DNA of 64,000 nt, from IMG/VR virus record IMGVR_UViG_3300028592_000004, positions 124,001 through 188,000 of that record. One strand, 5' to 3'. The position numbers were made by a program, and so were the translations under genes. A model generated the notes under the pieces. It made no database searches. It was not told the origin of the DNA and worked only from the letters and a program-made list of their open reading frames with translations. This document shows positions 8,920 to 59,512 of this stretch, one piece after another. Within the stretch, counting starts at the first letter, position 1. Every line of letters begins with the position of its first letter.

Positions 8920-9356
8920 GAGGACCCCGCCTGAATTGTGTCTTCGACGTACTTGAGGACGCCGCCTTCAAAGATCCCCTTCGCATTGGCGTGCCCACGA
9001 CGGGCTGAGGCCGCGTGAGCCAGGGCTCGGACCGGCGTCAGCCGGCTGGCGCGAAAGGCACGCTCGGCGTGGGCCACGTAGCCGTTCTGCTCGGCCAAGG
9101 CGATCTCGTCACCAACCGTTCCCGGAGAGGCATCATCCGCGATGACCTCTTCGTAGTTGGCGCCAATCTCGGAGCGATCGAAGGGAGTCGTGATGCTGCC
9201 CAGGTCCAGCGGGTTGCCTTCCCACTCGCCCGGGTTCTGCCAGACCCGCTGCTCCTGATTGCGCAAGGCTCCCGAGATCTTGCCGGCCTGTTCAACCAGG
9301 TCGGTGATCAGGTTCGAGAAGACCTCGGAAACGCGTGCAACGCTCTTCGCTTTCAT
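8916..9356 (-). CDS. Hypothetical protein
   Basis: 146-aa ORF with 4-nt overlaps to both neighbours. Confidence 0.6.
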   Translation of the reverse strand: MKAKSVARVSEVFSNLITDLVEQAGKISGALRNQEQRVWQNPGEWEGNPLDLGSITTPFDRSEIGANYEEVIADDASPGTVGDEIALAEQNGYVAHAERAFRASRLTPVRALAHAASARRGHANAKGIFEGGVLKYVEDTIQAGSS

Positions 9357-10102
9357 ACGACCCCCAATCCGTCCAGTTCATCGACCTGAGCCTGGATGCG
9401 AGCCATACGCTGGCTGATCGCACCCGGAGAAAGATTCAGCTTTCGCGCCAGCTGCTTGCCGGACATCTTCTGCTGACCGTTCAGTCCGACCGAGTGCTCG
9501 ACCAGAACCTGATCGACCGGATCCAGATCGTCGTAGATGAACTGGATCCGATGCAAGAACGCGTCCGGCCCCATCACGCCAGGCTCGAAGCCGAAGCCTT
9601 CGTCGTCTTGTCCGGATTCGGAGATCTGCCCTTCTGTCACAGCGGGCCGGGTTGAACGGACGTAGGCGATCCGCTTCGGAGAGAAGCCGGTAAAGTCGGC
9701 CAGCTCCGAAATGGACGGCGAGCGGGAAAGCTGATCGAACAGCTCGTTCTCCGCTGCCGCTAGGGCTGCACCCTCCTGGGCGACTCGCTCTGGAACGTGA
9801 ATCAGTTGATTCTGCTGCGCAGCGTAGCGCTGAAGCCCCTGTAGCGAGGCCATGAGGTGCGTCCGGAGCGAGCCCCGGCCTGGATCGTAGGAGTCGACAG
9901 CGTTGGCGGCGATCAGACGCGCCCGCCCTTTGAGCTGAGGGCTGTTTGCACCACCGCCAAAGGTCCGCATGCCTGTCTGGATGATCGGGTCGACGGCCTT
10001 GACCATCGCTGTCCGCCTGGACGGGGACTGGTTCAGCTTGTAGGCCCGATACGGCTCACGGAACTCATCCTCCAGGTTCCCAAAGTCGAAGTTGCTCATC
10101 AC
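9353..10102 (-). CDS. Sigma-70 family RNA polymerase sigma factor (alternative/group 3-like)
   Basis: Region 2 (AVDSYDPGRGSLRTH..IHVP), region 3 (LSRSPSISELA) and region 4 HTH (MSGKQLARKLNLSPGAISQR). Confidence 0.85.
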   Translation of the reverse strand: MMSNFDFGNLEDEFREPYRAYKLNQSPSRRTAMVKAVDPIIQTGMRTFGGGANSPQLKGRARLIAANAVDSYDPGRGSLRTHLMASLQGLQRYAAQQNQLIHVPERVAQEGAALAAAENELFDQLSRSPSISELADFTGFSPKRIAYVRSTRPAVTEGQISESGQDDEGFGFEPGVMGPDAFLHRIQFIYDDLDPVDQVLVEHSVGLNGQQKMSGKQLARKLNLSPGAISQRMARIQAQVDELDGLGVV

Positions 10103-10107
10103 GCCTC

Positions 10108-12987: not shown

Positions 12988-12989
12988 AG

Positions 12990-15900
12990 TTACTTGATCG
13001 GCTCGTAGCCGACGCCTCCTGTGACCCGTCCTGGGTAACGCTGACCGTTGATCTCGACCGTGATCGTCGTACCTTGAGCCAGCCGCACCGTCTGCGGCCG
13101 GGCAGTCTGGGAGTCGACGTTTTCCTCGTCTTTCGGACGAAGCGATTTGACTGTCTCGGAGATGTAGGAGCTGACGACCTGCTCGCCAGTTCCTTCACCG
13201 CCCTTGCCGACTTCGCGGATGCGGAGGAGCCCGGAGGCTTTCCGCCGGAGCTCATCGGCTTCTCGTCCCTGGACTTTGTCGACGCTGACGCCCTGGTCCT
13301 TGGCCATCTTGTCGAGGCGTTCCTTTGCTTCGACCGCCTGGTCCAGTTCGCGACGGGCTGCAGCGGCGTCTTCTCCGGATCCCAGCGAGTCAGCCAGCCG
13401 CTTCGCTTCCTCGTCGCTCATTCGCGATCCGGTGGTCTTCACGACACGCTCGATCGCTTCCGCGTTCAAGTCGTCGTCCGATCGCCGGTTCTTCGACTGG
13501 TAGTCCTTGAAGCGATTCCGCTCCTCTTCGGTCATCTTCGGTCGGGCCGAGGGATCGAGCTTCATCTTTTCCTTGACGGCTCGCATTCCGCTCGTGATTC
13601 GCTCCTGGATCGCGAGTGCCTCCTTGTCGCCAGAGGCCAACAGATCCTGCACCGAGTTGAAGCCCTTCTTGCGGGCCATCAGTTCCAGCTCCGAGTAGCC
13701 CTCGTATGCCTTCTGAACGAGATCGAAGCCACCGGCACCAAGCTGCTCAATGGACGCCTCGTCGTTGAGCATCTGGCTGACGAGCTTCTTGCCGGACACG
13801 AACTGATCCGCGGACCGGGTGAAGATGTCCTTCCCCTCTTCTGTGTCCTTGGACCCGGAGCGGACCCCGTCGAGCGTCCGCTCGCTTGCCGCCATGATCT
13901 CTTCGATGTCCTGCTCTCCGACTTTGACCTTGGTGTTGTAGCCAAGATTGCCGGCGCGATCGTCGTACCCGCCTCCACCGGCGAGCTTGAGAGCCAACAG
14001 GCGGCTCTTGAGTTCGGGCGGCGTGGTGGGGTTGCGGAGCAGGTCGTCGATCGAGTCCGTTCGCTTGGAGCCGTTCGCGTTCGGGTTCGCGGCGAGGTAC
14101 TCCTCCCGGACTCGCTCCGCTTCGGTCTTGGCAGCCTCGCCGCCGGCCCGCAGCGCCGACACCGAGCGGGAGATCGACTCCTGACGCTGGGCTCGCTTGG
14201 CGGGATCCTTCTCGGTGGCCGCAATGTTCTCGTACTCCTTCTGCAGGGCCGTCATCTCGTAGGCCTGCAGAGCCAGAGCCTCCCGGTCGCCAACCTTGCC
14301 TAGCTCCTTCGGGTCGATCTTCGCGATCCGCTTCATGATCTCGACAGGGTCCTGGACGTTCAGGATCTCCGCGATCGCACTGCCGAAGTCCTCAGTTGGA
14401 TTCTGGATGACGTCCGACAGCCGACGAAGCGGACCGGACTGTCCGAGCCCGGCGAGCGCCTTGCGCATTGTTGCGTCGACGCGAGCCTGCTGTGTCTGCA
14501 CCTGCTGCCGCTTCATGACTTCTGGATCCATCAGGTCCAGCATGTTCTGAGCGGAGTCGGCCCACTTGTAGGCCGGATCCTGACGAATCCGCTGCTCGAA
14601 GTCGCCCCATCCAGTGATCGCCGCGTCGAGGGCCTGCTGGTCCGTGATGGTGATGCCACGTTCAGCGAAGGACGTCTTGATCTTGTCGGCAAGGATCTTG
14701 TTGCGGCGCCCGGCCACACGGCGGTCCTCGGCCGACATCTCCTGCAGCGTCTTGGCGACAAGCGGCGAGACAGCACCGGCAGCGTTCCGGGCATCCTCGG
14801 TCGAGGCTCCCGCAGCTGTCGCGGCTCCGACGAGCCCAGCGTTCATCTCCTGAGCAATCAGCCGCTGGATGTCGCGACCTTGGAGCTGCCGGACAATGTC
14901 CGAACCGCCGAACTTGAACGTGTACTCCTGGTTGGAGTACTTGTCCATCAGAACGGAGTTTGCCGTCCGCGGATCGAGGCCAGACTGCTCAGCCAGGGCC
15001 ATCCACTTGGCGTTGTCCATGTCGACGGACATCTTCTCGCCGGTGATCGGATTCACGAACTCCGTCTGACCGTTGCGGATGGCGTCGGCCAGAGCCGCCA
15101 GCGGGGAGCCTTCCTTGAAGCCGCGCTCCTCGGCGAGCCGCATCGTGGCTCCGATCTGGTTGCCGACTGTGGAGTTGGCCCCGCGCAGCCGTAGCTCCTG
15201 ATCACGCATGGTGATCTCTTCGAGTGACTTCCGGCCCCAGGCCGAGATGTCCCCACGGCCGACGTCGCGGAAGGCCGCACCGAAGGCCGCGGCGCCCTGG
15301 GTGGCCGTCACGGCGAAGACACGGTCCAGGCCGATCTGGCTGGCCAGGGCTGCACCCTGAGCGGTCAGGCCGGTCATCGCCTGAATACCCATTCCGGTCT
15401 GCGTCGCCAGCGACTGCGTGGTTCGAACGATTCGCTCCATCTCGCCCGGGGCCATCGTCGCCAGCCCGCCCTGGGTGAGCATGTTCAGCCCTTCAATGAT
15501 CTCCTTCATGGGGGCGTTCGGGCGTCCCATGTCGCCAAAGATGTCCCGCATAGCGGAAACGACGCCGGCCATGCTCTTGAGCCGGTCAGTGTTGCGGCGG
15601 ACGTCGAACATTCGGAGGTTCGCGTCGAACTCAGTGGGTGAATCCCGCCGCAGCTGCTCGATCGTCTCGATCGGCTTCTTTTCCGAATCGGCCATCAACC
15701 GATTCTGCTCTTCGTTCGAGTACGTGCCGATCGACCGGCCCATCAGTCCACGGGTTTGCATCTCGTCGTAGAGCTGACCAACCTGCCCGCCGCTAAGACC
15801 CCGCCAGCTTGTGATGTCGGCGCCCGGTCCAAAGAACCGGGACTGGATCTCGCGGGCCATGAAGCCGGCGGACTCACCCGACATCCCGATCCGTCCGGTG

Positions 15901-16406
15901 ACCGGATCGACCGCGTACCGCCCACCTTGGCTCAGGTAGTGGGCCATGACCATCGCCGAACCGCGGCTACCGTGGAGCTGATCGGCCAAGTCTGGGGCGA
16001 ACTGCACCATGAATGGCATCAGCCCGCCGATGTCGCGGGCGACACCGGACGCGAGCCGTTCCTCCTCCAGACCCATGCGGGTGCCCGTCATCTGGGCTAT
16101 CCCGCGGATCATCTGGATGTAGGTCTGCTCGTCCGCCCCGCGGGCCATCTGGACAGCCTGGTTCCGCTGATTCCAGAAGTCTTTGACCCGCCACTGGTCA
16201 AAGACGTTCTGCATCGGCATGAACTGCGTTGGCATTCCGCCGCCGGTGAACGGCGACGCCAGCATCTGGGCAAGAATGCCCAGCAGCGGGTTACTTTGGA
16301 GGGCCGGAATGTTGAGGTCGAACGGCATCCCGGGCGCGTTGACCCGACCGAACATTGGCCCGACCGCCGACCGCGCCATGATCTCCTGCAGGAGCTGCTC
16401 GTCCAT
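12990..16406 (-). CDS. Tail tape measure protein
   Basis: 1138 aa, Ala/Gly/Gln/Met-rich helical composition, no Cys, between chaperone and baseplate genes. Confidence 0.8.
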   Translation of the reverse strand: MDEQLLQEIMARSAVGPMFGRVNAPGMPFDLNIPALQSNPLLGILAQMLASPFTGGGMPTQFMPMQNVFDQWRVKDFWNQRNQAVQMARGADEQTYIQMIRGIAQMTGTRMGLEEERLASGVARDIGGLMPFMVQFAPDLADQLHGSRGSAMVMAHYLSQGGRYAVDPVTGRIGMSGESAGFMAREIQSRFFGPGADITSWRGLSGGQVGQLYDEMQTRGLMGRSIGTYSNEEQNRLMADSEKKPIETIEQLRRDSPTEFDANLRMFDVRRNTDRLKSMAGVVSAMRDIFGDMGRPNAPMKEIIEGLNMLTQGGLATMAPGEMERIVRTTQSLATQTGMGIQAMTGLTAQGAALASQIGLDRVFAVTATQGAAAFGAAFRDVGRGDISAWGRKSLEEITMRDQELRLRGANSTVGNQIGATMRLAEERGFKEGSPLAALADAIRNGQTEFVNPITGEKMSVDMDNAKWMALAEQSGLDPRTANSVLMDKYSNQEYTFKFGGSDIVRQLQGRDIQRLIAQEMNAGLVGAATAAGASTEDARNAAGAVSPLVAKTLQEMSAEDRRVAGRRNKILADKIKTSFAERGITITDQQALDAAITGWGDFEQRIRQDPAYKWADSAQNMLDLMDPEVMKRQQVQTQQARVDATMRKALAGLGQSGPLRRLSDVIQNPTEDFGSAIAEILNVQDPVEIMKRIAKIDPKELGKVGDREALALQAYEMTALQKEYENIAATEKDPAKRAQRQESISRSVSALRAGGEAAKTEAERVREEYLAANPNANGSKRTDSIDDLLRNPTTPPELKSRLLALKLAGGGGYDDRAGNLGYNTKVKVGEQDIEEIMAASERTLDGVRSGSKDTEEGKDIFTRSADQFVSGKKLVSQMLNDEASIEQLGAGGFDLVQKAYEGYSELELMARKKGFNSVQDLLASGDKEALAIQERITSGMRAVKEKMKLDPSARPKMTEEERNRFKDYQSKNRRSDDDLNAEAIERVVKTTGSRMSDEEAKRLADSLGSGEDAAAARRELDQAVEAKERLDKMAKDQGVSVDKVQGREADELRRKASGLLRIREVGKGGEGTGEQVVSSYISETVKSLRPKDEENVDSQTARPQTVRLAQGTTITVEINGQRYPGRVTGGVGYEPIK

Positions 16407-20806: not shown

Positions 20807-21319
20807 CTAAGCACCGGCGCCGGCGCCACCAGCGATGTTCCCGGCCGCGGCTGCACCGTTCAGGTCGAGGCTGACGAACATCATGGTCAGCGTCTCGTTG
20901 ATGAGCATGTTCATGGCTTCGACCGTGACGGCGATCGAGGTGATCACCGCGTTCTTGATCGAGAACCGCATGCCCTGGAATTCACCCTGCGAGTTACAGC
21001 CGGCGTCCACCTCGAAGTTGAGGTTGTTCGTGGCAGCGTTACAGACATTGCCGAACTTCGTGTAGAACCCGACCTGGATGGCCCGGGGGCCGAGCACGCG
21101 TCCAAGCTGGATGTTCCCCTGCGTACGGCCGGCGACCAGATAGGTGAACTGGGTGCCGATTTCGTACAGCCGGGTGATGTTCTGCACGTAGTTGACGGAG
21201 ATCTGCTGGGTGAGCAGACCAACGCCGGTCACGTTGTTGTTGCCGCCGAAGACGACACGGGCCGCGTCCGCTGCGAACGAGCCCTTGTAGTCGTTCCCCT
21301 GACGACCGTAGATGTCCAT
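20807..21319 (-). CDS. Tail tube protein
   Basis: 170 aa directly after sheath; Q.I...Y.Q.I.RLYEIG....Y.V.GR..G pattern. Confidence 0.8.
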   Translation of the reverse strand: MDIYGRQGNDYKGSFAADAARVVFGGNNNVTGVGLLTQQISVNYVQNITRLYEIGTQFTYLVAGRTQGNIQLGRVLGPRAIQVGFYTKFGNVCNAATNNLNFEVDAGCNSQGEFQGMRFSIKNAVITSIAVTVEAMNMLINETLTMMFVSLDLNGAAAAGNIAGGAGAGA

Positions 21320-41484: not shown

Positions 41485-41531
41485 TGCACCCATCCGTGGT
41501 GAATTGCGTGGCGGTCCGTGCCGTGAGGCCC

Positions 41532-43483: not shown

Positions 43484-43725
43484 CAGAACCCTACGTCGGA
43501 CAGCGTGGGTGCGTCACGGTGACGGATTTGCACTTCCGATCGGTTGAGGCCCAGGTTACCCAGTACCTGCTCGAACCGAGGATCTTCAAAGGTGTAGGCC
43601 TGGACCAGGCCGTCTGCGAGTTCGATCGCAACCGCCACGATGGTTCCCTGGCGGTTGCGAATCACGACGCGACGAGCTTCTGCGACCTGGGGCTCAGCCA
43701 GCTTTTGGAAAAACTCGATCTGCAT
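43483..43725 (-). CDS. Hypothetical protein
   Basis: 80 aa, AAGGAG RBS, TGATG coupling to the beta'C gene. Confidence 0.6.
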   Translation of the reverse strand: MQIEFFQKLAEPQVAEARRVVIRNRQGTIVAVAIELADGLVQAYTFEDPRFEQVLGNLGLNRSEVQIRHRDAPTLSDVGF

Positions 43726-44494
43726 TACCGAGGCTCCTTGCGAGTGCCGCCAGGTTTGCCATCGACTGGGCCGGCGTCAAGGAGGACGCGGACTTGCTGA
43801 CCGAGGAACCGATTCCCTGGTAGTCGCTCGCCGTCTTGCCGGCAGCCATTCCAGGGGCGGCACCCTGGATCGGGTCGATGGGTGGAATCGCACTGGGCTG
43901 ACCGCCTGCGGCAGCCGCCGGGTCCATCCCCGCAGCGGCCGGATCACCGGCCGGAAGAGCTCCGGCCTGATCCTGATTGGCCATCTGCATCTGCATCGGA
44001 TCGGGCGGCGGGCCGAGGGCCACGTCCGCCGGGATCGGGATCTGCATGTGGTTCATGATCTCGGCGACCATCCGCATGATCTGCCAGAGCTTCGTGTCGA
44101 GGATGGCCGGGTCGACCTTCTTCGTGGCCGGCTTGCCCATGCCGGGCATCCCGCCGGTGCCGCCCGCTCCGCCTGCTCCGCCCATCATCTGCATGGCCTG
44201 AACGACGGCCTGGACCATCGCGGGATCCGCTTGGCCCCCTCCGCCGCCCATCGGAGGCCCGGCGAGGGGATCGGCCGGCATTCCACCGCCCGGAGGCATT
44301 CCAGGGGCTCCACCCGGCGCCGGCGCTCCACCCATCGCGGCCGGATCACCACCCGGCGGCATACCCGGGGCACCGCCCGGAGGGGCTCCACCGCCAGGCG
44401 GCACGACCGACGCCTTGAAGAACGGCTGTGCCTGACCGGGGTTGTTGGCTTCGTGCTGAGCCAGCTTGAGAATCGTCGGGTTGAGCAAGCTCAT
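43694..44494 (-). CDS. Pro/Gly/Ala/Met-rich low-complexity protein with K-x-A motifs
   Basis: 266 aa between the two RNAP genes; KLA, KTA, KSA. Confidence 0.6.
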   Translation of the reverse strand: MSLLNPTILKLAQHEANNPGQAQPFFKASVVPPGGGAPPGGAPGMPPGGDPAAMGGAPAPGGAPGMPPGGGMPADPLAGPPMGGGGGQADPAMVQAVVQAMQMMGGAGGAGGTGGMPGMGKPATKKVDPAILDTKLWQIMRMVAEIMNHMQIPIPADVALGPPPDPMQMQMANQDQAGALPAGDPAAAGMDPAAAAGGQPSAIPPIDPIQGAAPGMAAGKTASDYQGIGSSVSKSASSLTPAQSMANLAALARSLGNADRVFPKAG

Positions 44495-44517: not shown

Positions 44518-47500
44518 TTACCGGGGATTGATAATCTCGACGTTGTCGTCCACGCCGATCTCGCCCCGGCGGTAGGCCTGTACTGCGTCTCTCACTGTAG
44601 CGAACGTCCTAGTCCGATTCGAGGTCGGCGAAGGCTTGGACGCCCGATAGAGGCCCCCAGCATACTCCTTCCCAGGCAGCTGGTGAGCGCGGAAGTTGGA
44701 GACCGCCAGCAAATTCCGGCTGGGCAGCATCTTCTCGTAGGCATCTGCGACAGCCTCGTCGCTCTGCGGAACATGGTACTGCATCGCGTCGCCGTCGAAG
44801 TCAGCGTTGAATCCGGTGACGATCGTCGGCGAGATGTGGATCGTGTCGTCCTGGATCAGTTTCGGCCGGAACGCCATCAGGTTGTACCGGTGAAGCGTCG
44901 GTGCCCGGTTGAGCACGACCGGCCGATCTTCCATCGTCCGGAGCAGCATCGTGCGGGCGCGATCGGACCGCGACGTGACAGCTCGGGCCGCGTCCATCCG
45001 ACTCATCCCGTTGCGAACCAGTCCGCGAACGATGTGCGGCTTGTAGACCTCCCACGCCTTATCTTCCGGGATCCCCACTTCGTCCATGTCGAGATCCGGG
45101 TCTGGAATGATTGTGCCGCGACCGACCGTGTCGACCACCGAGCCGATCAGCTTCTGCTGGACGAAGCCATACTTCGGCGAACCACCGAAGATCGTCTTCA
45201 GCAGTCCCTTTACCTTGCGTTCCTGGTTCTTCGGCTGAGTCGGATCCGCCAGACCCGTGAGGGCCTTGAACGAGTTGTAGACGGCCAGGCGCTCATCACC
45301 CAGGTCGTCGAACTTGCCGGCCGCATCCTTCAGGATTCCGTTCGAATCCATGATCTCCTTGTAGAGCGCGTTGGCGTCGGCCACCATCGGTAGCTTGGAG
45401 CCCTGCATGACAGACACCGGCCGGAACACCGGCGGAATGACCGGCACCTTCGTAAGCATCCAGTCCCGCGGGTGGATCCCGTGCTGCTCCGCGCTCTTGA
45501 GGTACTTCAGCTTCCGGATGGCCTCATCCCGCCGGGTCTTCTTGCCGGACGCGATATCCGCCCGAGCGTTCTCGATCATTCGCGGGAGGTTGATCGAGTC
45601 CAGGGCGTACTTGATGGCGCTCGGCCCGGTGCGGTCGTTCAGCTTCTCGCGGCCGGCGAGGATGTCGAGGAACTTGTTCTCGGTCAGGCCGAGGACGCGA
45701 CGGATCGGTTCCTCCATGACAGGCGACGGCATCGGCTCACTGAGCTTGATGAAGCTCCACCGGTTACCGCCGTGCCCGCCGGTCAACTCTGGATCGAACA
45801 GACCGCCCTTGACCGGGTTGAGCCCGCCCTTCCAGTCGACAGTGTCGGAATTGGTGATCTCGCGGTTGCCAGCGAACTCGTCGATGTCGGCGTCGCGGAG
45901 GGCCAGGGTGTTGAACCGTGTCCCGTTCCGCACCACGTTGATCCCGGAGCCGCGGAGCGTATCCACGAACTTCTTGTAGACCATCGGGACCTTCGGCATC
46001 GGCGGAGCGTGACCGCTCATGTACTGCGTCCAGTACTCCGGATGCTGCTGTCCGCGCACGACGGCAGCGTCACGCAGGAACTCCGTGGCTCCGTGGCTCA
46101 GGAGGGCGTTGGCATCCAGGAGACTCACCCGCTTGCTTCCGGTCTGACCACCCTTCGCCGGCAGCCCCTCGCTGGTGTAGCCGCCCATGCTCCGACCCTG
46201 GCCCTTCGACTCGGCCGTGTGGTGGAGCTTCATGAAGTAGCGGTTGCCGGTGAAGATCCCCGGGATCTTCCGGTTGTTCGAACTCGGGTCGATCAGGTCT
46301 TCGGTGTCGGACAGACCATTCTTCTGCAGCTCCTGCATAGCGTACTGCACAAGGTCCGGGATGTCCTTGAAGTCCTTGACGTTGTAGTGCTTGCCGGTCA
46401 TCGCGGCGATCTTGCCAAGCGTCGCCTCAACCACCTGGGCGGGGTTGGTGCGGGTGATGATCCCCAGCGGGTTGGCGAGCACTTCGTACGGCTTACCGTC
46501 TGCACCGACAGGCATCTGGCTGTCGGGGATGATCTTCGCGATGACGCCCTTGTCCCCGTAGCGGCCGGAGATCTTGTCGCCGGTCTGGGCCTGCATCACG
46601 CTCTTGACGGTGACCACGATCCCCTTGTCCGTCTTGGCGACGTCGACAACCTCTCCGGGAGAGTGGTGGTCCCAGGTCTCCGTCTGGTCAGAGAAGGACC
46701 GATCCCGGGCCTTGTGAAGTGAGTTCTTGGCCCGCTCCTTCTGCTTGGCGCCGAGGATGATCGGGTCATCCGGCTGCAGGATCGTTCCCGGCTTGACCAC
46801 GCCATCGTCATCGATCGAGTCCAGCACCTTCCGCGGGTACTTGCTCGGGAACATGCTGATGAAGTCCCGCTTCTTCGTCCGGATGTTGTCGTCCAGGTCC
46901 AGCCCGTGCTGGTACATGTGCTGACTGCTCAGCCGCTTGGCGAAGGACTCGCTGATGGCGAAGGCATCCTCAAAGTTGATCCCCTTCCAGGCGATGTAGG
47001 CCGTCCGGGCATTCCGGCCGAGGGCCACGACTCCGTTCTTGTCGGTGTAGTTCGAGTGGGCGAGGAGCTGTCCCTGACCAACGCGATCCCCGGGCTTCAC
47101 AACGGCGGTGTTGTGGAGGTAGGTCTTTCGGTTCGAGGGGTCGTGATTCCAGAGCTCGACGACTTCCTTCTTGCCGTCCGGCGTCTGAATCGTGATCTCG
47201 TCGTTGTCGACGTGGGTGACCGTCCCGTCGACCTTGCTGCGGGATGCCCCGAACATCTCGCCGTACCGGTTCTCAAAGCTGTCGTCGACGTCCTCCGGCA
47301 CGCCGGTGCGGACAAACGGAGCTTCCCCGTCGTCGAGCGAGAGGGCCTGCGTCAGCATTCGCTGGGCCATCGCCGCCCGCTGCCCCTTCATGGCCGACTT
47401 CATGGGGACCATCGTCACCATCGGAGAGAGTGTGCTCTCCATGTTCGGCACTTCGAAGTCAACCTTGTCGCGCGGCACGAACTTCATCTTGCCGCCGACG

Positions 47501-48978
47501 AGCGCCGGGACCTGGTCCTTGTAGGTCGCCATCGCGTTCGGGAAGGCGAGGACAGCCTTGGTGATCTCCTGCGGTGACTTGAAGACGGTCTGGCCGGTCC
47601 GCGCGTCCCGGAAGGGAGCGTACATACGGCCGTCCTTCCCCTTCTCCGCAGCGTAGGCGAAGCGGGAGTCGACACCGGCCTTGAGCGATTCAGGCGTGAC
47701 CAGGCTGTCGATGAAGCCGAACTGTCCAGGCTGGACGCTCCGCGCTTCGTCGGGCACCGAGTCGACGCTCGGGATCCCGCCCTCACCCAGCCGGCTGACG
47801 CGGTACATCTGCTCAATGAGCATCCCCGGGTTGATCTCTTCCCCGGGGTTCCCCAGACCGCTGTCGGTGATGGCGCTGAGCAGGCCGCTCGTCAGGATCC
47901 CGGACGGGATATGGTCCAGGTTCTTGCGGATGGTGCCCTTCCACAGCATCCGGCGGAGCATGTTCTTGTCTCGACCGAAACGCTCTGCGAGGAGATCTTC
48001 GGGGCCGAGGAGCGTCTGGAAGGCCGGGTTGTCGCGGTCGTCCGTCTCGTCTTCGCCCTTGTTGATCGCCAGCAGCTTGCGGGTGGCCGCGAGCCACGTC
48101 GGGGCGTCGACCTTGTCGAATGCCTCGCGAAGGGTCTCCTTGTTGACCTCCGGATCGAGCTTCATCTTCCGGAAGGCTTCAGCAACGGCCTGCCCGCGCA
48201 GTCCCTCGTCCGGTTCGTTGCCGCGGACCAGCCGCCGGTAGAGCTTGTCGACCGCGCCGCGATCGTTCTTCGCCATGTTGGCGGCAGCCAGCTCGGGTCC
48301 CCACGCTTCGTTCAGCTGGGACGGCGTGACACCCATTGCCCGCAGGACCGGCCACATGGGGATCTCACCTTGGGCGATCTTGAGTTTGAAGATCCCGGAC
48401 TCCGGATCCATCATCACCCGATGCGCGAGCCCCTGGCCGGGGAGCACGTTGATGTGGGACTCCAGCTCGCCGCTCTCCTTCTGGCGGGAGAACGCTCCGG
48501 ACATGAGGCGAAGCTGGTGGCCAAGCGAGTAGCGGTTCCCGCTGAGGATGAAGGCCCCGCGGTCCCCAAAGTAGGGGACGTTCGCGATTGTAGCCCGCCG
48601 TTCGGAGATCGGCTGCTGCGTGGCCAGGTCGACCAGGCGCCAGGTCCCTTTCAGCTTCCGGGACAGCGTCTTCCCGGTGAGGATGGCGTTCTTCTGGTCC
48701 TTCTTCGAGTACCGTTCCGGCCCCTCGTACGCCGGGTCGACCAGCTCCAGCCGGTGCGTCTTGCTCTCGACCGGCTGGAACTTCATCGCGGAGTTCAGCA
48801 CGTTGTCGAAGATCGACTGCCGGATGGCTGTGACGTCCCCGAAGCCTCGACGTCCGGTCGGCTGAGCGAGCGGCGGAGGAGACCAGGGAGCGGGCGCCGG
48901 AGGGGTGCCCATTTGTGAATCCAGCCCCTGCAGCAGAGGCGAGGGGCTGGGGAGAAGGCCGTCCATGAAGTCAGGCAT
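44518..48978 (-). CDS. Phage multisubunit RNA polymerase, beta + beta' N-terminal fusion (catalytic chain)
   Basis: beta motifs NFEDA, GDKISGRYGDKGVI, NPLG..TR.N..Q, YFMKLHH; beta' motifs GLFD, VPVIPP..RP, LNRAPTLHR, NADFDGD (44788-44808). Confidence 0.97.
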   Translation of the reverse strand: MPDFMDGLLPSPSPLLQGLDSQMGTPPAPAPWSPPPLAQPTGRRGFGDVTAIRQSIFDNVLNSAMKFQPVESKTHRLELVDPAYEGPERYSKKDQKNAILTGKTLSRKLKGTWRLVDLATQQPISERRATIANVPYFGDRGAFILSGNRYSLGHQLRLMSGAFSRQKESGELESHINVLPGQGLAHRVMMDPESGIFKLKIAQGEIPMWPVLRAMGVTPSQLNEAWGPELAAANMAKNDRGAVDKLYRRLVRGNEPDEGLRGQAVAEAFRKMKLDPEVNKETLREAFDKVDAPTWLAATRKLLAINKGEDETDDRDNPAFQTLLGPEDLLAERFGRDKNMLRRMLWKGTIRKNLDHIPSGILTSGLLSAITDSGLGNPGEEINPGMLIEQMYRVSRLGEGGIPSVDSVPDEARSVQPGQFGFIDSLVTPESLKAGVDSRFAYAAEKGKDGRMYAPFRDARTGQTVFKSPQEITKAVLAFPNAMATYKDQVPALVGGKMKFVPRDKVDFEVPNMESTLSPMVTMVPMKSAMKGQRAAMAQRMLTQALSLDDGEAPFVRTGVPEDVDDSFENRYGEMFGASRSKVDGTVTHVDNDEITIQTPDGKKEVVELWNHDPSNRKTYLHNTAVVKPGDRVGQGQLLAHSNYTDKNGVVALGRNARTAYIAWKGINFEDAFAISESFAKRLSSQHMYQHGLDLDDNIRTKKRDFISMFPSKYPRKVLDSIDDDGVVKPGTILQPDDPIILGAKQKERAKNSLHKARDRSFSDQTETWDHHSPGEVVDVAKTDKGIVVTVKSVMQAQTGDKISGRYGDKGVIAKIIPDSQMPVGADGKPYEVLANPLGIITRTNPAQVVEATLGKIAAMTGKHYNVKDFKDIPDLVQYAMQELQKNGLSDTEDLIDPSSNNRKIPGIFTGNRYFMKLHHTAESKGQGRSMGGYTSEGLPAKGGQTGSKRVSLLDANALLSHGATEFLRDAAVVRGQQHPEYWTQYMSGHAPPMPKVPMVYKKFVDTLRGSGINVVRNGTRFNTLALRDADIDEFAGNREITNSDTVDWKGGLNPVKGGLFDPELTGGHGGNRWSFIKLSEPMPSPVMEEPIRRVLGLTENKFLDILAGREKLNDRTGPSAIKYALDSINLPRMIENARADIASGKKTRRDEAIRKLKYLKSAEQHGIHPRDWMLTKVPVIPPVFRPVSVMQGSKLPMVADANALYKEIMDSNGILKDAAGKFDDLGDERLAVYNSFKALTGLADPTQPKNQERKVKGLLKTIFGGSPKYGFVQQKLIGSVVDTVGRGTIIPDPDLDMDEVGIPEDKAWEVYKPHIVRGLVRNGMSRMDAARAVTSRSDRARTMLLRTMEDRPVVLNRAPTLHRYNLMAFRPKLIQDDTIHISPTIVTGFNADFDGDAMQYHVPQSDEAVADAYEKMLPSRNLLAVSNFRAHQLPGKEYAGGLYRASKPSPTSNRTRTFATVRDAVQAYRRGEIGVDDNVEIINPR

Positions 48979-48979: not shown

Positions 48980-50059
48980 TTACGTTGGCGTCGTCATTCC
49001 GGAGAGATCGGTCTGGGAGAACCCACCCTGGTTCTGCTGCAGCCGCATTTGCATCGACTGCTGCATCTGCATCTTCCGCTGGTTCATCCGCTGGAGAGCG
49101 GACGAAGCGGCTTGGCTCGCGGAGACTCCCTTCGGCCGCACATTCGACTTGGCCGAAGGGAGCGCGGCAATCTTCTCTTCTTCGGGCGGCATGAGCGTCG
49201 CCGTCGTCGGAATCGCGGGCTTCTTCGGGGCCGGCGGCATGTGGTAGGGGACCGGCATCGCGATCACCGGCCGCGGGCTGCTGTCGTACAGCTGACGGTT
49301 CCGGCGACGGACGGCCTCGTTCAGGGCATCCCCTTCGCTACGGCTCCGTGCCCAGTTGTAGGTCGCGAGCCCGGCCCCGCCGGCCAGCATCGCGTTCAGC
49401 AGGCCCAGCATGCCCAGACCCTTGTTGATGATCGCACGCTTCTCGTACACGAAGTCGAGATCATCACTGGCCTGCTTACCAAGGTGCTGGGCGTTGAGAG
49501 CCTGTTCGTACTCGTTCCGGGCCGCTGCCAGCTCGCTGTCGACTTCGTTCTTCCGTGCGGAATCGAACAGGGAGTCGGTCAGCTTGTAGCCGCCATAGAG
49601 CCCGCCGCCAAGGGCTGCGGCGCTTGCTGGCCAGGCCCAGGGAATGTCGGAGAACGTCGCGGCGTTGTCGCCCATAAGCCGGCCCATGAGCGGGCCTCGC
49701 ATCTGCTCGACGCCGTTCACGACGGGAGCGAAGACGCCGGACATGTGGCCGAGGTTCTCAGCGATCCCCGAGAGCAGGCCCGGCTTGGCCGGTGCCGCCG
49801 GGGCAGCGGCGAGCTTCTCTTCCTCGGGCTGCCGGCGGACCGGCATACGAATCGGAAGAACAACCGTGCGGTTCGGAATCTTCGGCGGAGAGGTTGTGTT
49901 CCGGTCGAAGAGGTTGAGAGCTCCGCTGGCTCCGCGGAGAGCCATCCCCGCGCCGGCGCTCAGCAAACCCATCTGGAGGAGCTGCTCAATCGATCGAGCT
50001 TTCAGCTGGTTCGTCGCCCCCGGGACGGAGTAGGGGGTCGGCATCATATTCGTCGGCAT
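48980..50059 (-). CDS. Glycine-zipper internal virion / ejection protein (putative)
   Basis: Three Gly/Ala hydrophobic segments separated by KLA, KQA, KRA, KIA; no Cys. Confidence 0.55.
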   Translation of the reverse strand: MPTNMMPTPYSVPGATNQLKARSIEQLLQMGLLSAGAGMALRGASGALNLFDRNTTSPPKIPNRTVVLPIRMPVRRQPEEEKLAAAPAAPAKPGLLSGIAENLGHMSGVFAPVVNGVEQMRGPLMGRLMGDNAATFSDIPWAWPASAAALGGGLYGGYKLTDSLFDSARKNEVDSELAAARNEYEQALNAQHLGKQASDDLDFVYEKRAIINKGLGMLGLLNAMLAGGAGLATYNWARSRSEGDALNEAVRRRNRQLYDSSPRPVIAMPVPYHMPPAPKKPAIPTTATLMPPEEEKIAALPSAKSNVRPKGVSASQAASSALQRMNQRKMQMQQSMQMRLQQNQGGFSQTDLSGMTTPT

Positions 50060-55718: not shown

Positions 55719-55785
55719 GTTGGGTCTCATTCCTTGAGTGGGAGAATCCAATTCCTTGCGGCGCTAAGCATGCCGCGACTCCCCT

Positions 55786-55814
55786 GTTGTACCCCGAATG
55801 GACCGGCCACGGAA
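55786..55814 (-). promoter_or_regulatory. Sigma70-like promoter for the envelope/protease cassette
   Basis: TTCCGT-17 nt-TACAAC in an intergenic gap. Confidence 0.4.
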
Positions 55815-55825
55815 GCCTCATTCCC

Positions 55826-56824: not shown

Positions 56825-57135
56825 TCGGAATCCCTCCTGTATCCGAGTCGGTACAAAATACGGGCCAGGTCGGTCGCCACAGTGGCGCACCATTCCTCCG
56901 ACCTGTGCCAGTCTGCGGCGTGCAGGACCTCATGGATGATGACGTCCAGCTCTCGCTCGCCCGAGATGGCGGTCGAGATCACGATCTCACGCTTCTTGAG
57001 ATCGGAAGAAGAGAATGGGTGCTGGGTCTTGGCCTCACCCGTCGTGAACCCATCGAGATTACGGAGATACTTGCGGACGAACCGCCAGCGCTTCCCAAAA
57101 ATGATGACCTGCTTCAGCACTCGTCCACAATCCAT
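56821..57135 (-). CDS. Small HExxH (minimal zincin-like) protein
   Basis: IIHEVLHA...SEE; ATGA coupling to the phosphoesterase. Confidence 0.65.
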   Translation of the reverse strand: MDCGRVLKQVIIFGKRWRFVRKYLRNLDGFTTGEAKTQHPFSSSDLKKREIVISTAISGERELDVIIHEVLHAADWHRSEEWCATVATDLARILYRLGYRRDSE

Positions 57136-57157
57136 GTGTTGGAGGCAGTCGGATCGG

Positions 57158-59512
57158 TCAGTCGAAGGCGGCGCTGATGGCACCGGTCAACAACCCGCCC
57201 CAGAGGCCCGCTTGCTGCAGGCCCACCTGGGCCTCGGGATTGAGGCCCGCTAGGGCTCCCATTGTTTTACCCAGAAGCAACCCACCGAGAAATCCCCCAG
57301 CCCCGCTGAAGGCAACGGTCTTGGCGATGTCGAAAGGCGAAACGGAGGGCTTTCCACCGCTCCCCAGCGAGGCGGCGACGAGCGTACCGCTCGCGGCTGC
57401 AGCGACTTGCGCTGGCGTGCCACCGAAGTTCGAGCCGGGCCGTGCGGCGTCATTCCAGATCACACTCCCGAAGGCGTCGACGGGGATATTCGACAGGAAC
57501 ATTGTCCCCGTCATGTCCTCCGCGGCGTTGGTTTTCGTCCGACCGGACCAGCCGAAGTCGTCGGCCGGCATCTCGGAACCCATCCCAGACAGGTTCGAGT
57601 TCCACCCGTGCGGCGTCTTGAGACCCCAGTACAAACCCGGAGCAGCGCCCAGGCCGGCGCCCAGGAGCCCCAGCGTGCGTCGCATCCGCTTGCCGGAGAA
57701 GTACTGCTCCGGAAGCATGTTGTCCATCAGATAGCCGGCACCGTAGCCCAGGCCGGCTCCCAGAGCTCCACCAACCAGCGTGCTGGAGAGCGGGCTCGGC
57801 CCACCGAGCGGCTTGTTGACCTTCGACCACATGTCCGAAATCCCCTCGAACATCGCGCCCTGCTTGAACATCGTCCAGCCCGGCTCGTCGGCCGGGATCG
57901 TACTGACCAGGCCCTTCTCCGGATGGACGAACCAGCAGCCCTCTGCCTCCGCATACTTCACGACCAGCGGCGCCGCCTGCTCGTACAGAGCTCGCACCCG
58001 GGCGGGGACTTCCCGCCAACTGAGGTGTTCCAGCTCGTCGATCGCGCTCGCTTCCTTCTGGTTGCGCTGTCCGATCTCCTTCAACAGATCCCGGAACTTC
58101 ATGTTGATCTCTTCCTTCTGCTCGGCCAGACGCCGCAGGTGATAGTCCGCTCCAGACCGATCATCGGTCAGGCCGAGGAACCGTTCCAGAGAGGATGGCT
58201 CCCGAGGGCGGGACAGGAAGTTCTGGATGAGGACGTTCCGCTGGTCTGTCGGAAGGTAGCCGTGACTATCGTGACGGATCCCGCGGCCTTTGACCTGAGT
58301 ATCGCGAGCCTCGTTCCAGTGCGGATCCAGGATCTGCATCAGCCGAGTGCCACGGAGCGAGATCCCTTCCGAGCCGGCGGGACCGGCGAGCAGCACCGGA
58401 GCCAACCCGTTGTTGTAGCTCTCAATAATCCGCTTCCGCTCCAGGTCGGCGATACCGCCGTGGAAGAGGCCGTAGGGGATCTTGTCTCGCTCCAGGGCCG
58501 CGGCGTAGGGACGGAGGCCGGCGTCAATGAAGTTCGAGTAGACGAGCGCTCGGCTCTTCGGGTTCTTCGCCATCTGCTCCTTGAGGAGCTTATAGGCCAG
58601 CTGCAGCTTGGGCGAGGAATCGAACGCGGCCAACGGGTCCGGGTTCGACATGAACGGGAACATCGACAGCCCGATCTGTCGCGGTCCGGTCAGGAAGGAC
58701 GTCATCCGCTTCCGTTCGAGGGCGGAGAGCGGGAAGTTGTTCTGCAGCTTGTAGCGCAGGACCCAGGGGATCGAGTTCCAGAACGACCGATACGCGGTCG
58801 TCTGCTCGTCCGACATGTCAACTTCGTGCATCTCGTCTGTGCGATCCACGAGCGGCTTATCGGGAGCGTGGTAGTCGACGTGGCCCGCCAGCAGATCTTC
58901 CAGCCGGCCGACGTTCTTCGGCTCCATCACCTGGCCGGGCGTGACACCGAACAACGAGGCGAAGAAACCCGGGCGAACCGTCTTCTGCTTGATGAACTGG
59001 TGTGTGAACGCGTCCGGCGTGATCCGCTCGCCGGTCAGGATCGACATCGGCGCCGCGAGATCGGACGGGTGATTGACGATCGGCGAGCCCGAGAGGAGGT
59101 AAACGTGCTTGGCCTTGTTCGCCAGGTCCGTCACTGCCTGCGTCCGCTGAGACTCAGGGTTCCGGATCCGGTGAGCCTCATCGACGATCAGAGTGTCCGC
59201 GGCCGGGGCCTTGCCCGCCGTCGCGCCCTCGTAGGACACAACGTTGCCCATCAGCGAGCCGTCAGTGAACTTGGCCTGCTCCTTCGCAAAGTTGGGACGC
59301 AGTGCCGCTGGCACGATAGCCGTGTACGGCTTGCCGGCGTTCTCTGCCGCAGCGATCGAGGCCAGAGTCTTCCCGCTCCCCACGTCGTGGAAGAGGAGCA
59401 TGCGGGACTCTTCGTCCTTCCCGGTCTGGGCGATCCGCTTCTGTTGAGGCTGCAGCTCGACGCCCGGCAGGAGGGCCGCGATCTTCAACTGGTCAACGAA
59501 GTCGGCGTCCAT
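57158..59512 (-). CDS. SF2 (SNF2-like) helicase/translocase fused to a C-terminal glycine-zipper region
   Basis: GSGKT, DEAH, SGSP, EGISL, Q..GRGIR; C-terminal GGALGAGLGYGAG and similar segments. Confidence 0.85.
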   Translation of the reverse strand: MDADFVDQLKIAALLPGVELQPQQKRIAQTGKDEESRMLLFHDVGSGKTLASIAAAENAGKPYTAIVPAALRPNFAKEQAKFTDGSLMGNVVSYEGATAGKAPAADTLIVDEAHRIRNPESQRTQAVTDLANKAKHVYLLSGSPIVNHPSDLAAPMSILTGERITPDAFTHQFIKQKTVRPGFFASLFGVTPGQVMEPKNVGRLEDLLAGHVDYHAPDKPLVDRTDEMHEVDMSDEQTTAYRSFWNSIPWVLRYKLQNNFPLSALERKRMTSFLTGPRQIGLSMFPFMSNPDPLAAFDSSPKLQLAYKLLKEQMAKNPKSRALVYSNFIDAGLRPYAAALERDKIPYGLFHGGIADLERKRIIESYNNGLAPVLLAGPAGSEGISLRGTRLMQILDPHWNEARDTQVKGRGIRHDSHGYLPTDQRNVLIQNFLSRPREPSSLERFLGLTDDRSGADYHLRRLAEQKEEINMKFRDLLKEIGQRNQKEASAIDELEHLSWREVPARVRALYEQAAPLVVKYAEAEGCWFVHPEKGLVSTIPADEPGWTMFKQGAMFEGISDMWSKVNKPLGGPSPLSSTLVGGALGAGLGYGAGYLMDNMLPEQYFSGKRMRRTLGLLGAGLGAAPGLYWGLKTPHGWNSNLSGMGSEMPADDFGWSGRTKTNAAEDMTGTMFLSNIPVDAFGSVIWNDAARPGSNFGGTPAQVAAAASGTLVAASLGSGGKPSVSPFDIAKTVAFSGAGGFLGGLLLGKTMGALAGLNPEAQVGLQQAGLWGGLLTGAISAAFD

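What the first reader, a model, noticed from the sequence alone, without database searches (positions are those of the whole stretch)
9353..59512. Cysteine exclusion marks a putative injected transcription kit
Seen (manual scan): no Cys in the RNAP chains (1486 and 638 aa), sigma (249 aa), the helicase domain (~480 aa), tape measure (1138 aa) or the 321/429/359/266-aa head proteins. The spike, hub, protease and GTs do contain Cys. Established: N4 virion RNAP lacks Cys, which is attributed to passage through the periplasm. Inference: RNAP, sigma and the SNF2-like ATPase are co-injected.
Basis: partly seen in the sequence, partly recalled or inferred. Interest (0 to 1): 0.7.

Follow-up and report, generated by a model that had tools for sequence, protein, structure and literature searches.

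The report
Cysteine-free phage RNA polymerase kit
A 229-kb phage encodes its own bacterial-type RNA polymerase and sigma factor. Evolution has kept both free of cysteine in more than 70 related genomes, a pattern that, together with virion proteomics from a cultured relative, suggests the enzyme travels in the virus particle and is injected to start infection.

Summary
The window lies in a 229,210-bp phage genome whose proteome is 1.19% Cys.

Comparison with relatives separates real signal from noise.
- The beta-beta'N fusion has 7 Cys in 109,964 aligned residues across 78 loci.
- beta'C has 1 Cys in 42,162 residues.
- The sigma-like protein has 0 in 6,457, and the 1138-aa protein has 3 in 44,059.
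- The two proteins flanking the RNAP genes have 0.05-0.08% Cys.
- Neighbouring virion proteins, including the portal and the 822- and 480-aa proteins, keep normal or high Cys.
- The collagen-like fibre and the 256-aa protein are Cys-free in this genome only.

Methionine is not depleted, and TGY triplets are common out of frame, so selection acts on the mature protein.

In the cultured relative Salmonella phage Arash, virion mass spectrometry found the orthologous RNAP chains, sigma and helicase among the best-detected proteins.

The injected-kit reading is therefore well supported for RNAP and sigma. It is weaker for the SNF2 ATPase, which is absent from three of four complete relatives.

Cys exclusion is not universal. 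The injected vRNAP of phiKZ has 16 Cys.

This is a known principle (N4) and a known type of packaging, extended to a large uncultured clade.

The parts
44518..48978 (-). RNAP large chain, 1486 aa: complete beta fused to the N-terminal part of beta', with the catalytic ADFDGD motif at residues 1392-1397. It has 0 Cys.
   Evidence: Pfam Rpb2_6 at 4.7e-49 and Rpb1_2 at 3.5e-27. Residues 1087-1486 align to bacterial beta' 157-542. Invariant D1393/D1395/D1397. 103 of 120 homologues have 0 Cys. 7 Cys in 109,964 aa across 78 loci.
41567..43483 (-). RNAP beta' C-terminal chain, 638 aa, 0 Cys. The second Zn-site cysteines of bacterial beta' are replaced.
   Evidence: Pfam Rpb1_5 at 1.3e-18. 1 Cys in 42,162 aa across 68 loci. 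Arash and D69 orthologues keep only a C-x51-C-x6-C-x2-C cluster, where this family has P/G/W/D.
48980..50059 (-). 359-aa protein of long helices and disordered linkers, immediately upstream of the RNAP large chain. Conserved and almost Cys-free. Function unknown; candidate packaging partner or ejection protein.
   Evidence: jackhmmer family in 82 sources with 11 Cys in 22,751 aa. AF2 pLDDT 63, all-helical. No PDB or Pfam match.
43694..44494 (-). 266-aa Pro/Ala/Met-rich, low-complexity protein lying between the two RNAP genes. Almost Cys-free across the family.
   Evidence: Family in 80 sources with 14 Cys in 18,718 aa. Consensus in alignment A4. Met 8.3%.
43483..43725 (-). 80-aa protein lying between the RNAP genes. 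Conserved in position, with a lower than average Cys content.
   Evidence: 78 sources, 23 Cys in 5,846 aa.
9353..10099 (-). Sigma-70-family factor, 248 aa, 0 Cys, encoded between the 1138-aa protein and the baseplate wedge gene.
   Evidence: Profile against PDB SigA at E 1.1e-15 over regions 2.4-4. AF2 pLDDT 88, and all Foldseek top hits are sigma factors. 26 homologues have 0 Cys in 6,457 aa. Homologous and syntenic to Arash Gp10. Predicted docking on the beta' clamp helices has ipSAE 0.65 against a best control of 0.00.
12990..16406 (-). 1138-aa hydrophilic, Met-rich, His-poor protein encoded downstream of the sheath, tube and VgrG-like genes. Candidate tape measure or ejection protein. 0 Cys.
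   Evidence: 34 homologues have 3 Cys in 44,059 aa. RBH set has 0 Cys in 6,508 aa, P 6e-36. No Pfam or PHROG match. No hydrophobic segments.
57158..59512 (-). SNF2-family ATPase (residues about 10-490) with a C-terminal extension. One Cys, at residue 526.
   Evidence: Pfam SNF2-rel_dom and Helicase_C. 33% identity at E 6e-76 to the full length of Arash Gp217. 72 of 150 family representatives have 0 Cys. Absent from G003, G004 and G005.
36314..37603 (-). 429-aa head-module protein with near Cys-free orthologues. Homologous to Arash Gp220, which was detected in virions.
   Evidence: 5 Cys in 2,300 aa, P 7e-8. 33 Cys in 21,897 aa across 49 sources. jackhmmer to Arash 145213-146136.
35371..36336 (-). 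321-aa fast-evolving protein. The proteins at the same position in relatives are also Cys-free.
   Evidence: Positional equivalents of 321, 387, 517 and 584 aa carry 0, 0, 1 and 0 Cys.
32505..33866 (-). 453-aa head-module protein with 1 Cys. Its orthologues are nearly Cys-free.
   Evidence: 2 Cys in 1,742 aa, P 6e-8.
39025..41493 (-). 822-aa virion-module protein with normal Cys content (9 Cys). Serves as a contrast.
   Evidence: 0.99% Cys in 63 orthologues. Homologous to Arash Gp218, a virion protein with 36 unique peptides.
33925..35367 (-). 480-aa Cys-rich protein (8 Cys) sitting between Cys-free neighbours. Serves as a contrast.
   Evidence: 2.35-2.4% Cys in orthologues. Homologous to Arash Gp222, which was detected in virions.
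21421..24207 (-). Tail sheath, 928 aa, 1 Cys. Shows moderate family-wide Cys depletion.
   Evidence: PHROG tail sheath at 5e-11. 27 Cys observed against 66 expected.
30400..31326 (-). Major capsid protein candidate, 308 aa, 1 Cys.
   Evidence: PHROG major head protein at 1e-5. jackhmmer at 8e-145 to Arash Gp226, annotated as major capsid protein.

Best explanation
The window holds the virion-gene block of a contractile-tailed jumbo phage. This phage carries a single bacterial-type RNA polymerase, made of a beta-beta'N fusion plus beta'C, and one sigma-70-family factor.

Proposed mechanism:
1. These proteins are made together with the structural proteins.
2. They are loaded into the particle, probably with two helical or disordered partner proteins that flank the RNAP genes and with the 1138-aa tail-lumen or ejection protein.
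3. They are expelled through the tail at infection.
4. They reassemble in the cytoplasm into a holoenzyme that transcribes early phage genes without needing new protein synthesis.

Selection removes every free cysteine from this cargo, including both Zn-binding clusters of beta'. The likely reason is that no disulfide may form while the particle sits in an oxidising environment or during transit, because a crosslink would block unfolding and threading through the narrow channel.

Shown here: the RNAP and sigma identities, the conserved Cys exclusion, the synteny, and the contrast with Cys-containing shell proteins. Shown in a relative: presence in virions. Inferred: packaging in this phage, ejection, early transcription, and the reason for the exclusion.
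For: 1. Exclusion is specific and conserved. Among 61 orthologue groups ranked without prior choice, the four strongest Cys depletions are beta-beta'N (1 Cys in 8,961 aa, P 3e-44), the 1138-aa protein (0 in 6,508), beta'C (5 in 4,811) and sigma (0 in 1,505). Larger sets agree. The genomes span GC 0.43-0.70.

2. It is not composition, sulfur economy or DNA-motif avoidance. Met is 3.5% in the RNAP against 2.6% in the proteome. His and Trp are normal in the RNAP. There are 81 out-of-frame TGY triplets in the large gene and none in frame.

3. Inteins in about 10% of homologues are Cys-rich, but all use Ser at the +1 position, so the spliced enzyme stays Cys-free.

4. Residence in the virion shell does not require exclusion. 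The portal has 9 Cys, the 822-aa protein 9 and the 480-aa protein 8.

5. Gene order is conserved in four complete relatives: RNAP, head genes, MCP, sheath, tube, VgrG-like gene, 1138-aa gene, sigma, wedge.

6. Arash virion mass spectrometry: Gp206 (beta fusion) had the most spectra, with 128 unique peptides. Gp216 (beta') had 40, Gp217 (helicase) 38 and Gp10 (sigma) 24. Arash's second sigma, Gp196, has 3 Cys and was not detected.

7. In Arash, the only Cys in beta'C are four in a Zn-site pattern.

8. Only one RNAP and one sigma are detectable in this genome.

9. Sigma is predicted to dock on the phage beta' clamp helices, with ipSAE 0.65 against a best control of 0.00. That mark was reached by 58 of 80 solved complexes and 2 of 110 mismatched pairs. 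Partner pLDDT was at least 72 and the runs agreed in at least 65% of contacts. The result may reflect memory of known sigma complexes.

10. Precedent: N4 gp50, DEV gp71 and the Schitoviridae ejection operon.
Against: - There is no virion proteome, expression data or isolate for this phage.
- The Arash preparation listed 116 'virion' proteins, including obvious contaminants, and its authors allowed for carry-over.
- phiKZ's injected vRNAP has 16 Cys in 2,614 aa, only about half the density of its non-virion RNAP. Injection therefore does not require exclusion.
- A contractile tail should shield cargo from the periplasm, which weakens the stated cause.
- No phage-specific promoter motif was found.
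- If this one RNAP is also needed late in infection, packaging is not its only role.
Confidence: 0.68

Rival explanations
1. Cys depletion only reflects life outside the cell. All virion proteins avoid cysteine because particles persist in oxidising water. The RNAP is in the particle, or is merely abundant late in infection, but the pattern says nothing about ejection.
For: The structural block, with the strict set removed, has 0.75% Cys against 1.1-1.5% elsewhere. Sheath, wedge and MCP families are about 2- to 3-fold depleted.
Against: The depletion in the shell, tail and baseplate is partial. Portal, 822-aa and 480-aa virion proteins have normal or high Cys, whereas the RNAP, sigma and 1138-aa sets are 100- to 1000-fold depleted. 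An RNAP inside a particle has no evident use unless it is delivered.
Confidence: 0.12
2. The RNAP is not packaged. It is Cys-free because it must work in an infected cell under oxidative or thiol-reactive stress, or must escape a host factor that targets cysteines or Zn sites of RNAP.
For: The loss of both Zn clusters and of every thiol would make the enzyme insensitive to oxidants (inference). Only one RNAP set exists, so it probably also works during infection.
Against: This does not explain why the same exclusion applies to the 1138-aa tail-module protein and to the helical proteins of the head module. It also does not explain why replication enzymes of the same phage carry many Cys; for example, a 1362-aa protein has 26. 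The Arash orthologues dominate the virion proteome.
Confidence: 0.1
3. The SNF2 ATPase is delivered cargo but not a transcription factor. It belongs to the helicase family of phage 'polyvalent' proteins and acts on the incoming DNA or against host defence, as DarB does, rather than with the RNAP.
For: Its closest family members (39-54% identity) sit in proteins of up to 2,913 aa alongside LigD phosphoesterase, 2H phosphoesterase, GNAT and ligase domains. 72 of 150 have no Cys. Such proteins are proposed to be injected with the DNA (PMC5512222). The gene is missing from three of four complete relatives that keep the RNAP and sigma.
Against: In Arash the helicase gene starts at the stop codon of the beta' gene (141261), which suggests coupled expression. 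RapA-type SNF2 proteins are known to recycle RNAP (established knowledge, cited in PMC5512222).
Confidence: 0.45

Closest known systems
Salmonella phage Arash: Gp206, Gp216, Gp10 and Gp217 (PMC10585845)
   Same: - The same architecture, with a beta-beta'N fusion of 1525 aa plus a beta'C of 606 aa.
- The sigma gene lies next to the baseplate genes.
- It has an SNF2-type helicase.
- All four proteins were detected in purified virions.
- The large chain has 1 Cys, and sigma and the helicase have 0.
   Different: - Identity is only 25-33%.
- Its beta'C keeps a four-Cys Zn-type cluster.
- The helicase gene is adjacent to beta'.
- It has a second, Cys-containing sigma.
- Its authors did not note the Cys pattern and left carry-over open as an explanation.
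N4-like phages (Schitoviridae): virion RNAP gp50/gp71 and the ejection operon
   Same: - A virion-packaged RNAP is ejected to transcribe early genes.
- Cys suppression is conserved across the ejected proteins, at 0.00075% against a proteome value of 0.865% (PMC11445570).
   Different: - The N4 enzyme is a single-subunit T7-like polymerase inside a 3,400-3,500-aa polypeptide.
- These phages are short-tailed and have no sigma factor.
- The enzyme is unrelated in sequence to the one here.
phiKZ/AR9 virion RNAP (PMC7598289)
   Same: A multisubunit beta/beta'-like enzyme is packaged in the head and injected by a contractile-tailed jumbo phage. Its early transcription is independent of host RNAP and of protein synthesis.
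   Different: - It is split into four or more chains and has no sigma.
- A second, non-virion RNAP set exists.
- It is not Cys-free: 16 Cys in 2,614 aa.
- It is much more diverged from bacterial RNAP.
mReC lineage of Caudovirales with deep-branching RNAP (Weinheimer and Aylward 2020, PMC7481178)
   Same: These are metagenomic tailed phages, some above 200 kb, that encode bacterial-like beta and beta'. They come from IMG/VR, the same source as the relatives found here.
   Different: Overlap with this clade could not be shown. That paper mentions neither virion, packaging, sigma nor cysteine.
Polyvalent proteins, P1 DarB-type SNF2 helicases, and RapA
   Same: An SNF2-family ATPase of a phage, in a family that is largely Cys-poor and often part of giant delivered proteins.
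   Different: Here it is an 784-aa protein with no methylase domain. Neither an anti-restriction nor an RNAP-recycling activity has been tested.

Membership tests
Multisubunit (two double-psi beta-barrel) RNA polymerase, bacterial beta/beta' type | Beta catalytic-core domain (Rpb2 domain 6) | tested here: met
   PF00562 at 4.7e-49, residues 581-935 of the 1486-aa chain.
Multisubunit (two double-psi beta-barrel) RNA polymerase, bacterial beta/beta' type | Beta' active site with the Mg-binding DFDGD motif | tested here: met
   PF00623 at 3.5e-27. D1393, D1395 and D1397 are invariant in 22 sequences. Alignment to bacterial beta' 157-542.
Multisubunit (two double-psi beta-barrel) RNA polymerase, bacterial beta/beta' type | Beta' C-terminal half (Rpb1 domain 5: trigger loop and jaw region) | tested here: met
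   PF04998 at 1.3e-18 in the 638-aa chain.
Multisubunit (two double-psi beta-barrel) RNA polymerase, bacterial beta/beta' type | Two Cys4 zinc sites of bacterial beta' | tested here: not met
   Neither chain has any Cys. The positions of the second cluster, which Arash and D69 retain, are P, G, W and D here. This feature is typical of the family but not essential to it.
Sigma-70 family | Regions 2-4 (helical domains sigma2, sigma3 and sigma4 with the C-terminal HTH) | tested here: met
   Profile against PDB SigA at E 1.1e-15 over query residues 67-241, and a full-length match to S. aureus SigB. Foldseek probability is 1.00 to many sigma chains. Pfam Sigma70_r2 alone was not detected.
Sigma-70 family | Binds the beta' clamp helices of its RNAP | tested here: inconclusive
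   The model places sigma residues 25-65 on large-chain residues 1197-1250. ipSAE is 0.65 against a best control of 0.00. The mark was reached by 58 of 80 solved complexes and 2 of 110 mismatched pairs. The score may come from memory of solved complexes.
Virion-packaged, injected RNA polymerase | Protein present in purified virions | not testable with these tools
   Shown only for the orthologues in phage Arash (PMC10585845).
Virion-packaged, injected RNA polymerase | Early transcription independent of new protein synthesis and of host RNAP | not testable with these tools
   No isolate or expression data exist for this clade.
Virion-packaged, injected RNA polymerase | Genes embedded in the structural (late) gene block | tested here: met
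   The RNAP genes lie between head-module genes and sigma lies between tail and baseplate genes. The order is conserved in four complete relatives and in Arash.
Virion-packaged, injected RNA polymerase | Cys suppression, as in the Schitoviridae ejection proteins | tested here: met
   This is not a universal feature of the class, since phiKZ vRNAP has 0.61% Cys.
SNF2 family ATPase | SNF2-related N-lobe plus Helicase_C lobe | tested here: met
   PF00176 at 5.3e-13 and PF00271 at 6.4e-14.
Tail tape measure protein | Homology to a known tape-measure family | tested here: not met
   No Pfam or PHROG hit for the 1138-aa protein.
Tail tape measure protein | Long gene between the tube and baseplate genes, with variable length among relatives | tested here: inconclusive
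   The gene lies downstream of the sheath, tube, VgrG-like and 416-aa genes and upstream of the baseplate wedge. Homologues range from 734 to 1,844 aa. No hydrophobic segments.

The most novel reading that the evidence does not exclude
In this large, mostly uncultured phage clade, a complete bacterial-type holoenzyme (beta-beta'N, beta'C and sigma) is stored in the particle, threaded unfolded through a contractile tail, and reassembled in the host without alpha or omega subunits and without zinc. In some members it carries extra enzymatic domains fused to beta'C. If so, strict cysteine absence can be used as a sequence-only rule to read out the whole set of ejected proteins (the 'ejectome') of uncultured phages.
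Probability: 0.45. Interest if true: 0.75.

Novelty: new variant of a known kind. Interest (0 to 1): 0.6.

Why it matters
If correct, the clade has a life style not described for its RNAP in the metagenomic literature. It would be host-RNAP-independent from the first minute, using a sigma-dependent, bacterial-type enzyme delivered as protein.

It would also turn a simple sequence statistic into a predictor of which proteins of an uncultured phage are delivered into the host.

Finally, it points to a natural zinc-free, thiol-free multisubunit RNAP that must be able to unfold and refold. That is of interest for RNAP assembly and for protein engineering.

Tried and rejected
- megablast of the RNAP region against the phage collection found no match.
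- phmmer and Pfam searches of the genome found no second RNAP set and no second sigma.
- The 'sulfur sparing' idea was rejected because Met is enriched.
- DNA-level avoidance of TGY was rejected.
- A base-composition cause was rejected, because relatives span GC 0.43-0.70.
- The 359-aa protein is not an alpha-like RNAP subunit. It has no PDB profile hit, a low-confidence all-helical model and no informative Atlas neighbours. I did not run a fold search on that model because its confidence was too low.
- k-mer searches of 102 intergenic regions for a phage promoter found nothing above a coding-region control.
- Linking the clade to the mReC contig list through supplementary tables was inconclusive.
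- My first gene calls for the 69%-GC relative G004 picked the wrong strand. I redid them with a codon model trained on this genome.
- I did not fetch N4 gp50 itself. Its lack of Cys is taken from the literature.

Full report
**Context.** The window is bases 124,001-188,000 of a single 229,210-bp virus record with GC 0.61. Nearly all genes are on the minus strand. My own codon-usage gene calls give 287 genes, 67,069 residues and 797 Cys, or 1.19%. The window carries the virion-gene block:
- a collagen-like fibre at 93-1967;
- a baseplate wedge at 6820-8469;
- a VgrG-like protein at 18099-20693, with a weak DUF2345 match;
- a tube candidate at 20807-21319;
- the sheath at 21421-24207;
- a major-capsid candidate at 30400-31326.

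The portal and large-terminase homologues lie outside the window.

**The observation.** The 1486-aa ORF is a complete beta fused to the N-terminal part of beta'. It has Rpb2_6 and Rpb1_2 domains, invariant DFDGD aspartates, and an alignment to bacterial beta' 157-542. The 638-aa ORF is the rest of beta' (Rpb1_5).

The 248-aa ORF is a true sigma-70-family protein. A profile of 24 homologues matches SigA structures at E 1e-15 over regions 2.4-4. An AlphaFold model with pLDDT 88 finds only sigma factors as its top structural matches.

The 784-aa ORF has SNF2 and Helicase_C domains, and its single Cys is at residue 526.

Within this genome alone, P(0 Cys) is 1.9e-8 for the 1486-aa chain, 1.2e-6 for the 1138-aa protein and 4.9e-4 for the 638-aa chain. 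It is only 0.01-0.05 for each of the 248-359-aa proteins. Twelve proteins of at least 200 aa are Cys-free against 3.3 expected.

**Conservation.** This is the decisive evidence.
- The large RNAP chain has hundreds of metagenomic homologues at about 54% identity, from contigs of about 200 kb. Of the best 120, 103 have no Cys.
- In 80 IMG/VR loci, the orthologous large chain has 7 Cys in 109,964 aligned residues and beta'C has 1 in 42,162. The adjacent 822-aa protein has 0.99% Cys and the 480-aa protein 2.35%.
- I fetched four complete relatives (GC 0.47-0.69) and phage Arash, called their genes, and ranked all 61 reciprocal-best-hit groups by Poisson depletion with no prior selection. The top four were the large chain (P 3e-44), the 1138-aa protein (6e-36), beta'C (1.6e-18) and sigma (2e-8). 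The sheath, the 453-aa protein and the 429-aa protein followed.
- Independent homologue sets give 0 Cys in 6,457 aa for sigma and 3 Cys in 44,059 aa for the 1138-aa protein.
- Iterated searches show that the 359-aa and 266-aa proteins flanking the RNAP genes form families present in about 80 loci, with 0.05% and 0.08% Cys.
- The rapidly diverging protein at the position of the 321-aa ORF is also Cys-free in relatives.
- By contrast, the collagen-like fibre and the 256-aa protein are Cys-free only in this genome.

**What the signal is not.**
- Methionine is enriched, not depleted: 3.5% in the large chain, 4.7% in the 1138-aa protein and 8.3% in the 266-aa protein, against 2.6% in the proteome.
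- His and Trp are normal in the RNAP.
- The large gene has 81 TGY triplets out of frame and none in frame.
- The pattern holds from GC 0.43 to 0.70.

About one in ten large-chain homologues carries an intein, at three or more different sites. These inteins hold 6-15 Cys, including the catalytic Cys1, but the +1 extein residue is Ser in the cases inspected, so the spliced enzyme again lacks Cys. Selection therefore acts on the mature protein.

**Which proteins are spared.** Residence in the particle does not by itself demand exclusion. The portal homologue has 9 Cys. The 822-aa and 480-aa proteins, whose Arash homologues were detected in virions, have 9 and 8. The rest of the structural block is only about two-fold depleted, at 0.75% against 1.1-1.5%. 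The strict class is the RNAP, sigma, the 1138-aa tail-module protein, and several helical or disordered proteins of the head module.

**Experimental anchor.** The closest cultured relatives are Salmonella phage Arash and Vibrio phages D69, D148 and D181, at about 32% identity over 92-95% of the large chain. Arash has the same beta-beta'N and beta'C split. It also has a sigma (Gp10), homologous to the one here and likewise next to the baseplate genes, and a helicase (Gp217) that is 33% identical over its whole length to the SNF2 half of the window's protein.

In the published Arash virion proteome, Gp206 (the large chain) had the most spectra of all proteins, with 128 unique peptides. Gp216 had 40, Gp217 had 38 and Gp10 had 24 unique peptides at 100% coverage. 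The authors suggested early transcription but allowed for carry-over of abundant proteins. Their list of 116 proteins does include evident contaminants with 2-3 peptides (PMC10585845).

In Arash, the Cys counts are:
- large chain: 1 Cys in 1,525 aa;
- Gp10 and Gp217: none;
- second sigma, Gp196, not detected in virions: 3;
- other helicases: 5-9.

The four Cys of Arash beta'C sit at the same positions in Vibrio phage D69 (232, 284, 291 and 294; C-x51-C-x6-C-x2-C). That is the pattern of the second zinc site of bacterial beta', as I recall it from established knowledge of E. coli RpoC. The window's family has P/D/S, G, W/Y and D at those positions. So free thiols are also absent from the Arash enzyme, and the present clade has gone further and lost the zinc site.

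**Published precedent and limits.** N4 gp50 and DEV gp71 lack Cys, and across 191 Schitoviridae the ejection operon has about 0.001-0.006% Cys against 0.865% in proteomes. This has been attributed to passage through the periplasm (PMC11445570, and PMC2784036 citing Kazmierczak 2002).

The rule is not general. In phiKZ, the injected vRNAP (gp80, gp149, gp178, gp180) has 16 Cys in 2,614 aa (0.61%). The non-virion RNAP has 33 in 2,850 aa (1.16%), and the background is about 0.8%. A contractile tail should also shield cargo from the periplasm. Storage in an oxidising environment, together with the need to unfold through the tube, may be the better rationale. This remains unexplained.

**The kit.** Only one RNAP set and one sigma are detectable in the genome. 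A structure model docks sigma residues 25-65 onto large-chain residues 1197-1250, the clamp-helix region. ipSAE is 0.65 against a best control of 0.00. That mark was reached by 58 of 80 solved complexes and 2 of 110 mismatched pairs. Partner pLDDT was at least 72 and the runs agreed in at least 65% of contacts. The score may reflect memory of known sigma-beta' complexes.

The SNF2 ATPase is a variable member. It is present in this genome, in G001, in Arash and in 5 of 80 loci. It is absent from three complete relatives. Its nearest 150 family representatives are 0.25% Cys, 72 have none, and many are giant multidomain proteins with LigD phosphoesterase, 2H, GNAT or ligase domains. That is the 'polyvalent protein' class proposed to be injected with phage DNA (PMC5512222). 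It is therefore plausibly cargo, but whether it serves transcription (like RapA) or counter-defence (like DarB) is open.

In some relatives beta'C itself is extended by acylphosphatase-like and P-loop kinase-like domains and remains Cys-free.

**Comparison and novelty.** The pieces are known. Virion RNAPs are known from N4, phiKZ and crAss-like phages. Cys suppression in ejected proteins is known from N4 and DEV. Virion detection of this type of RNAP with sigma and helicase is known from Arash. The metagenomic paper on deep-branching phage RNAPs mentions neither virions, sigma nor cysteine, and I could not show that its contigs are this clade.

What is new:
- the near-absolute, clade-wide exclusion in a bacterial-type multisubunit enzyme and its sigma;
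- the loss of the zinc sites;
- the intein and Ser+1 control;
- the delimitation of a candidate ejected set by an unbiased statistic.

I rate it a new variant of a known kind. My confidence is about 0.68 for packaging and ejection of RNAP plus sigma, and about 0.5 for the ATPase being part of the same functional unit.

Noticed in passing
window 60802-61605 (-): A caspase-like Peptidase_C14 protein (E 1.3e-24, 6 Cys) lies next to a glycosyltransferase-like gene at 61624-62481. This is unusual in a phage late region.
   Followed up: no
L032:18720-22799, L063:17033-19789, L069:16067-19999: In some relatives the beta'C chain is 918-1369 aa long. In L032 the extension carries acylphosphatase-like, P-loop kinase-like (AAA_18/AAA_33) and DUF5661 domains, with only 1 Cys in 1,359 aa. 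The RNAP chain behaves there like a multidomain delivered protein.
   Followed up: partly
homologues P0006, P0007, P0010, P0023, P0082, P0088, P0098, P0100, P0103, P0104 and P0107 of window 44518-48978: Inteins of 320-370 aa, some with LAGLIDADG domains, interrupt the large RNAP chain at three or more different conserved sites. Where the junctions could be read, the intein starts with Cys and the +1 extein residue is Ser.
   Followed up: partly
L130 (Arash gp216) and L141:14154-15983 (Vibrio phage D69): Exactly four Cys sit at identical positions (232, 284, 291 and 294) in a Zn-site-like pattern. The window's family has replaced all four.
   Followed up: yes
window 93-1967 (-): A collagen-like (Gly-X-Y) tail fibre of 624 aa is Cys-free here, but its orthologues carry 12 and 71 Cys. 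This is an example of a non-conserved, composition-driven absence of Cys.
   Followed up: yes
window 33925-35367 (-): A 480-aa protein with consistently high Cys (8-16 per protein, about 2.4%) sits between Cys-free head-module genes. Its Arash homologue, Gp222, was detected in virions. Function unknown.
   Followed up: no
phiKZ, L140:11335-18048: The 2237-aa tail-associated lysin or tape-measure-like protein gp181 of phiKZ has a single Cys, although the phiKZ vRNAP is not Cys-free.
   Followed up: no
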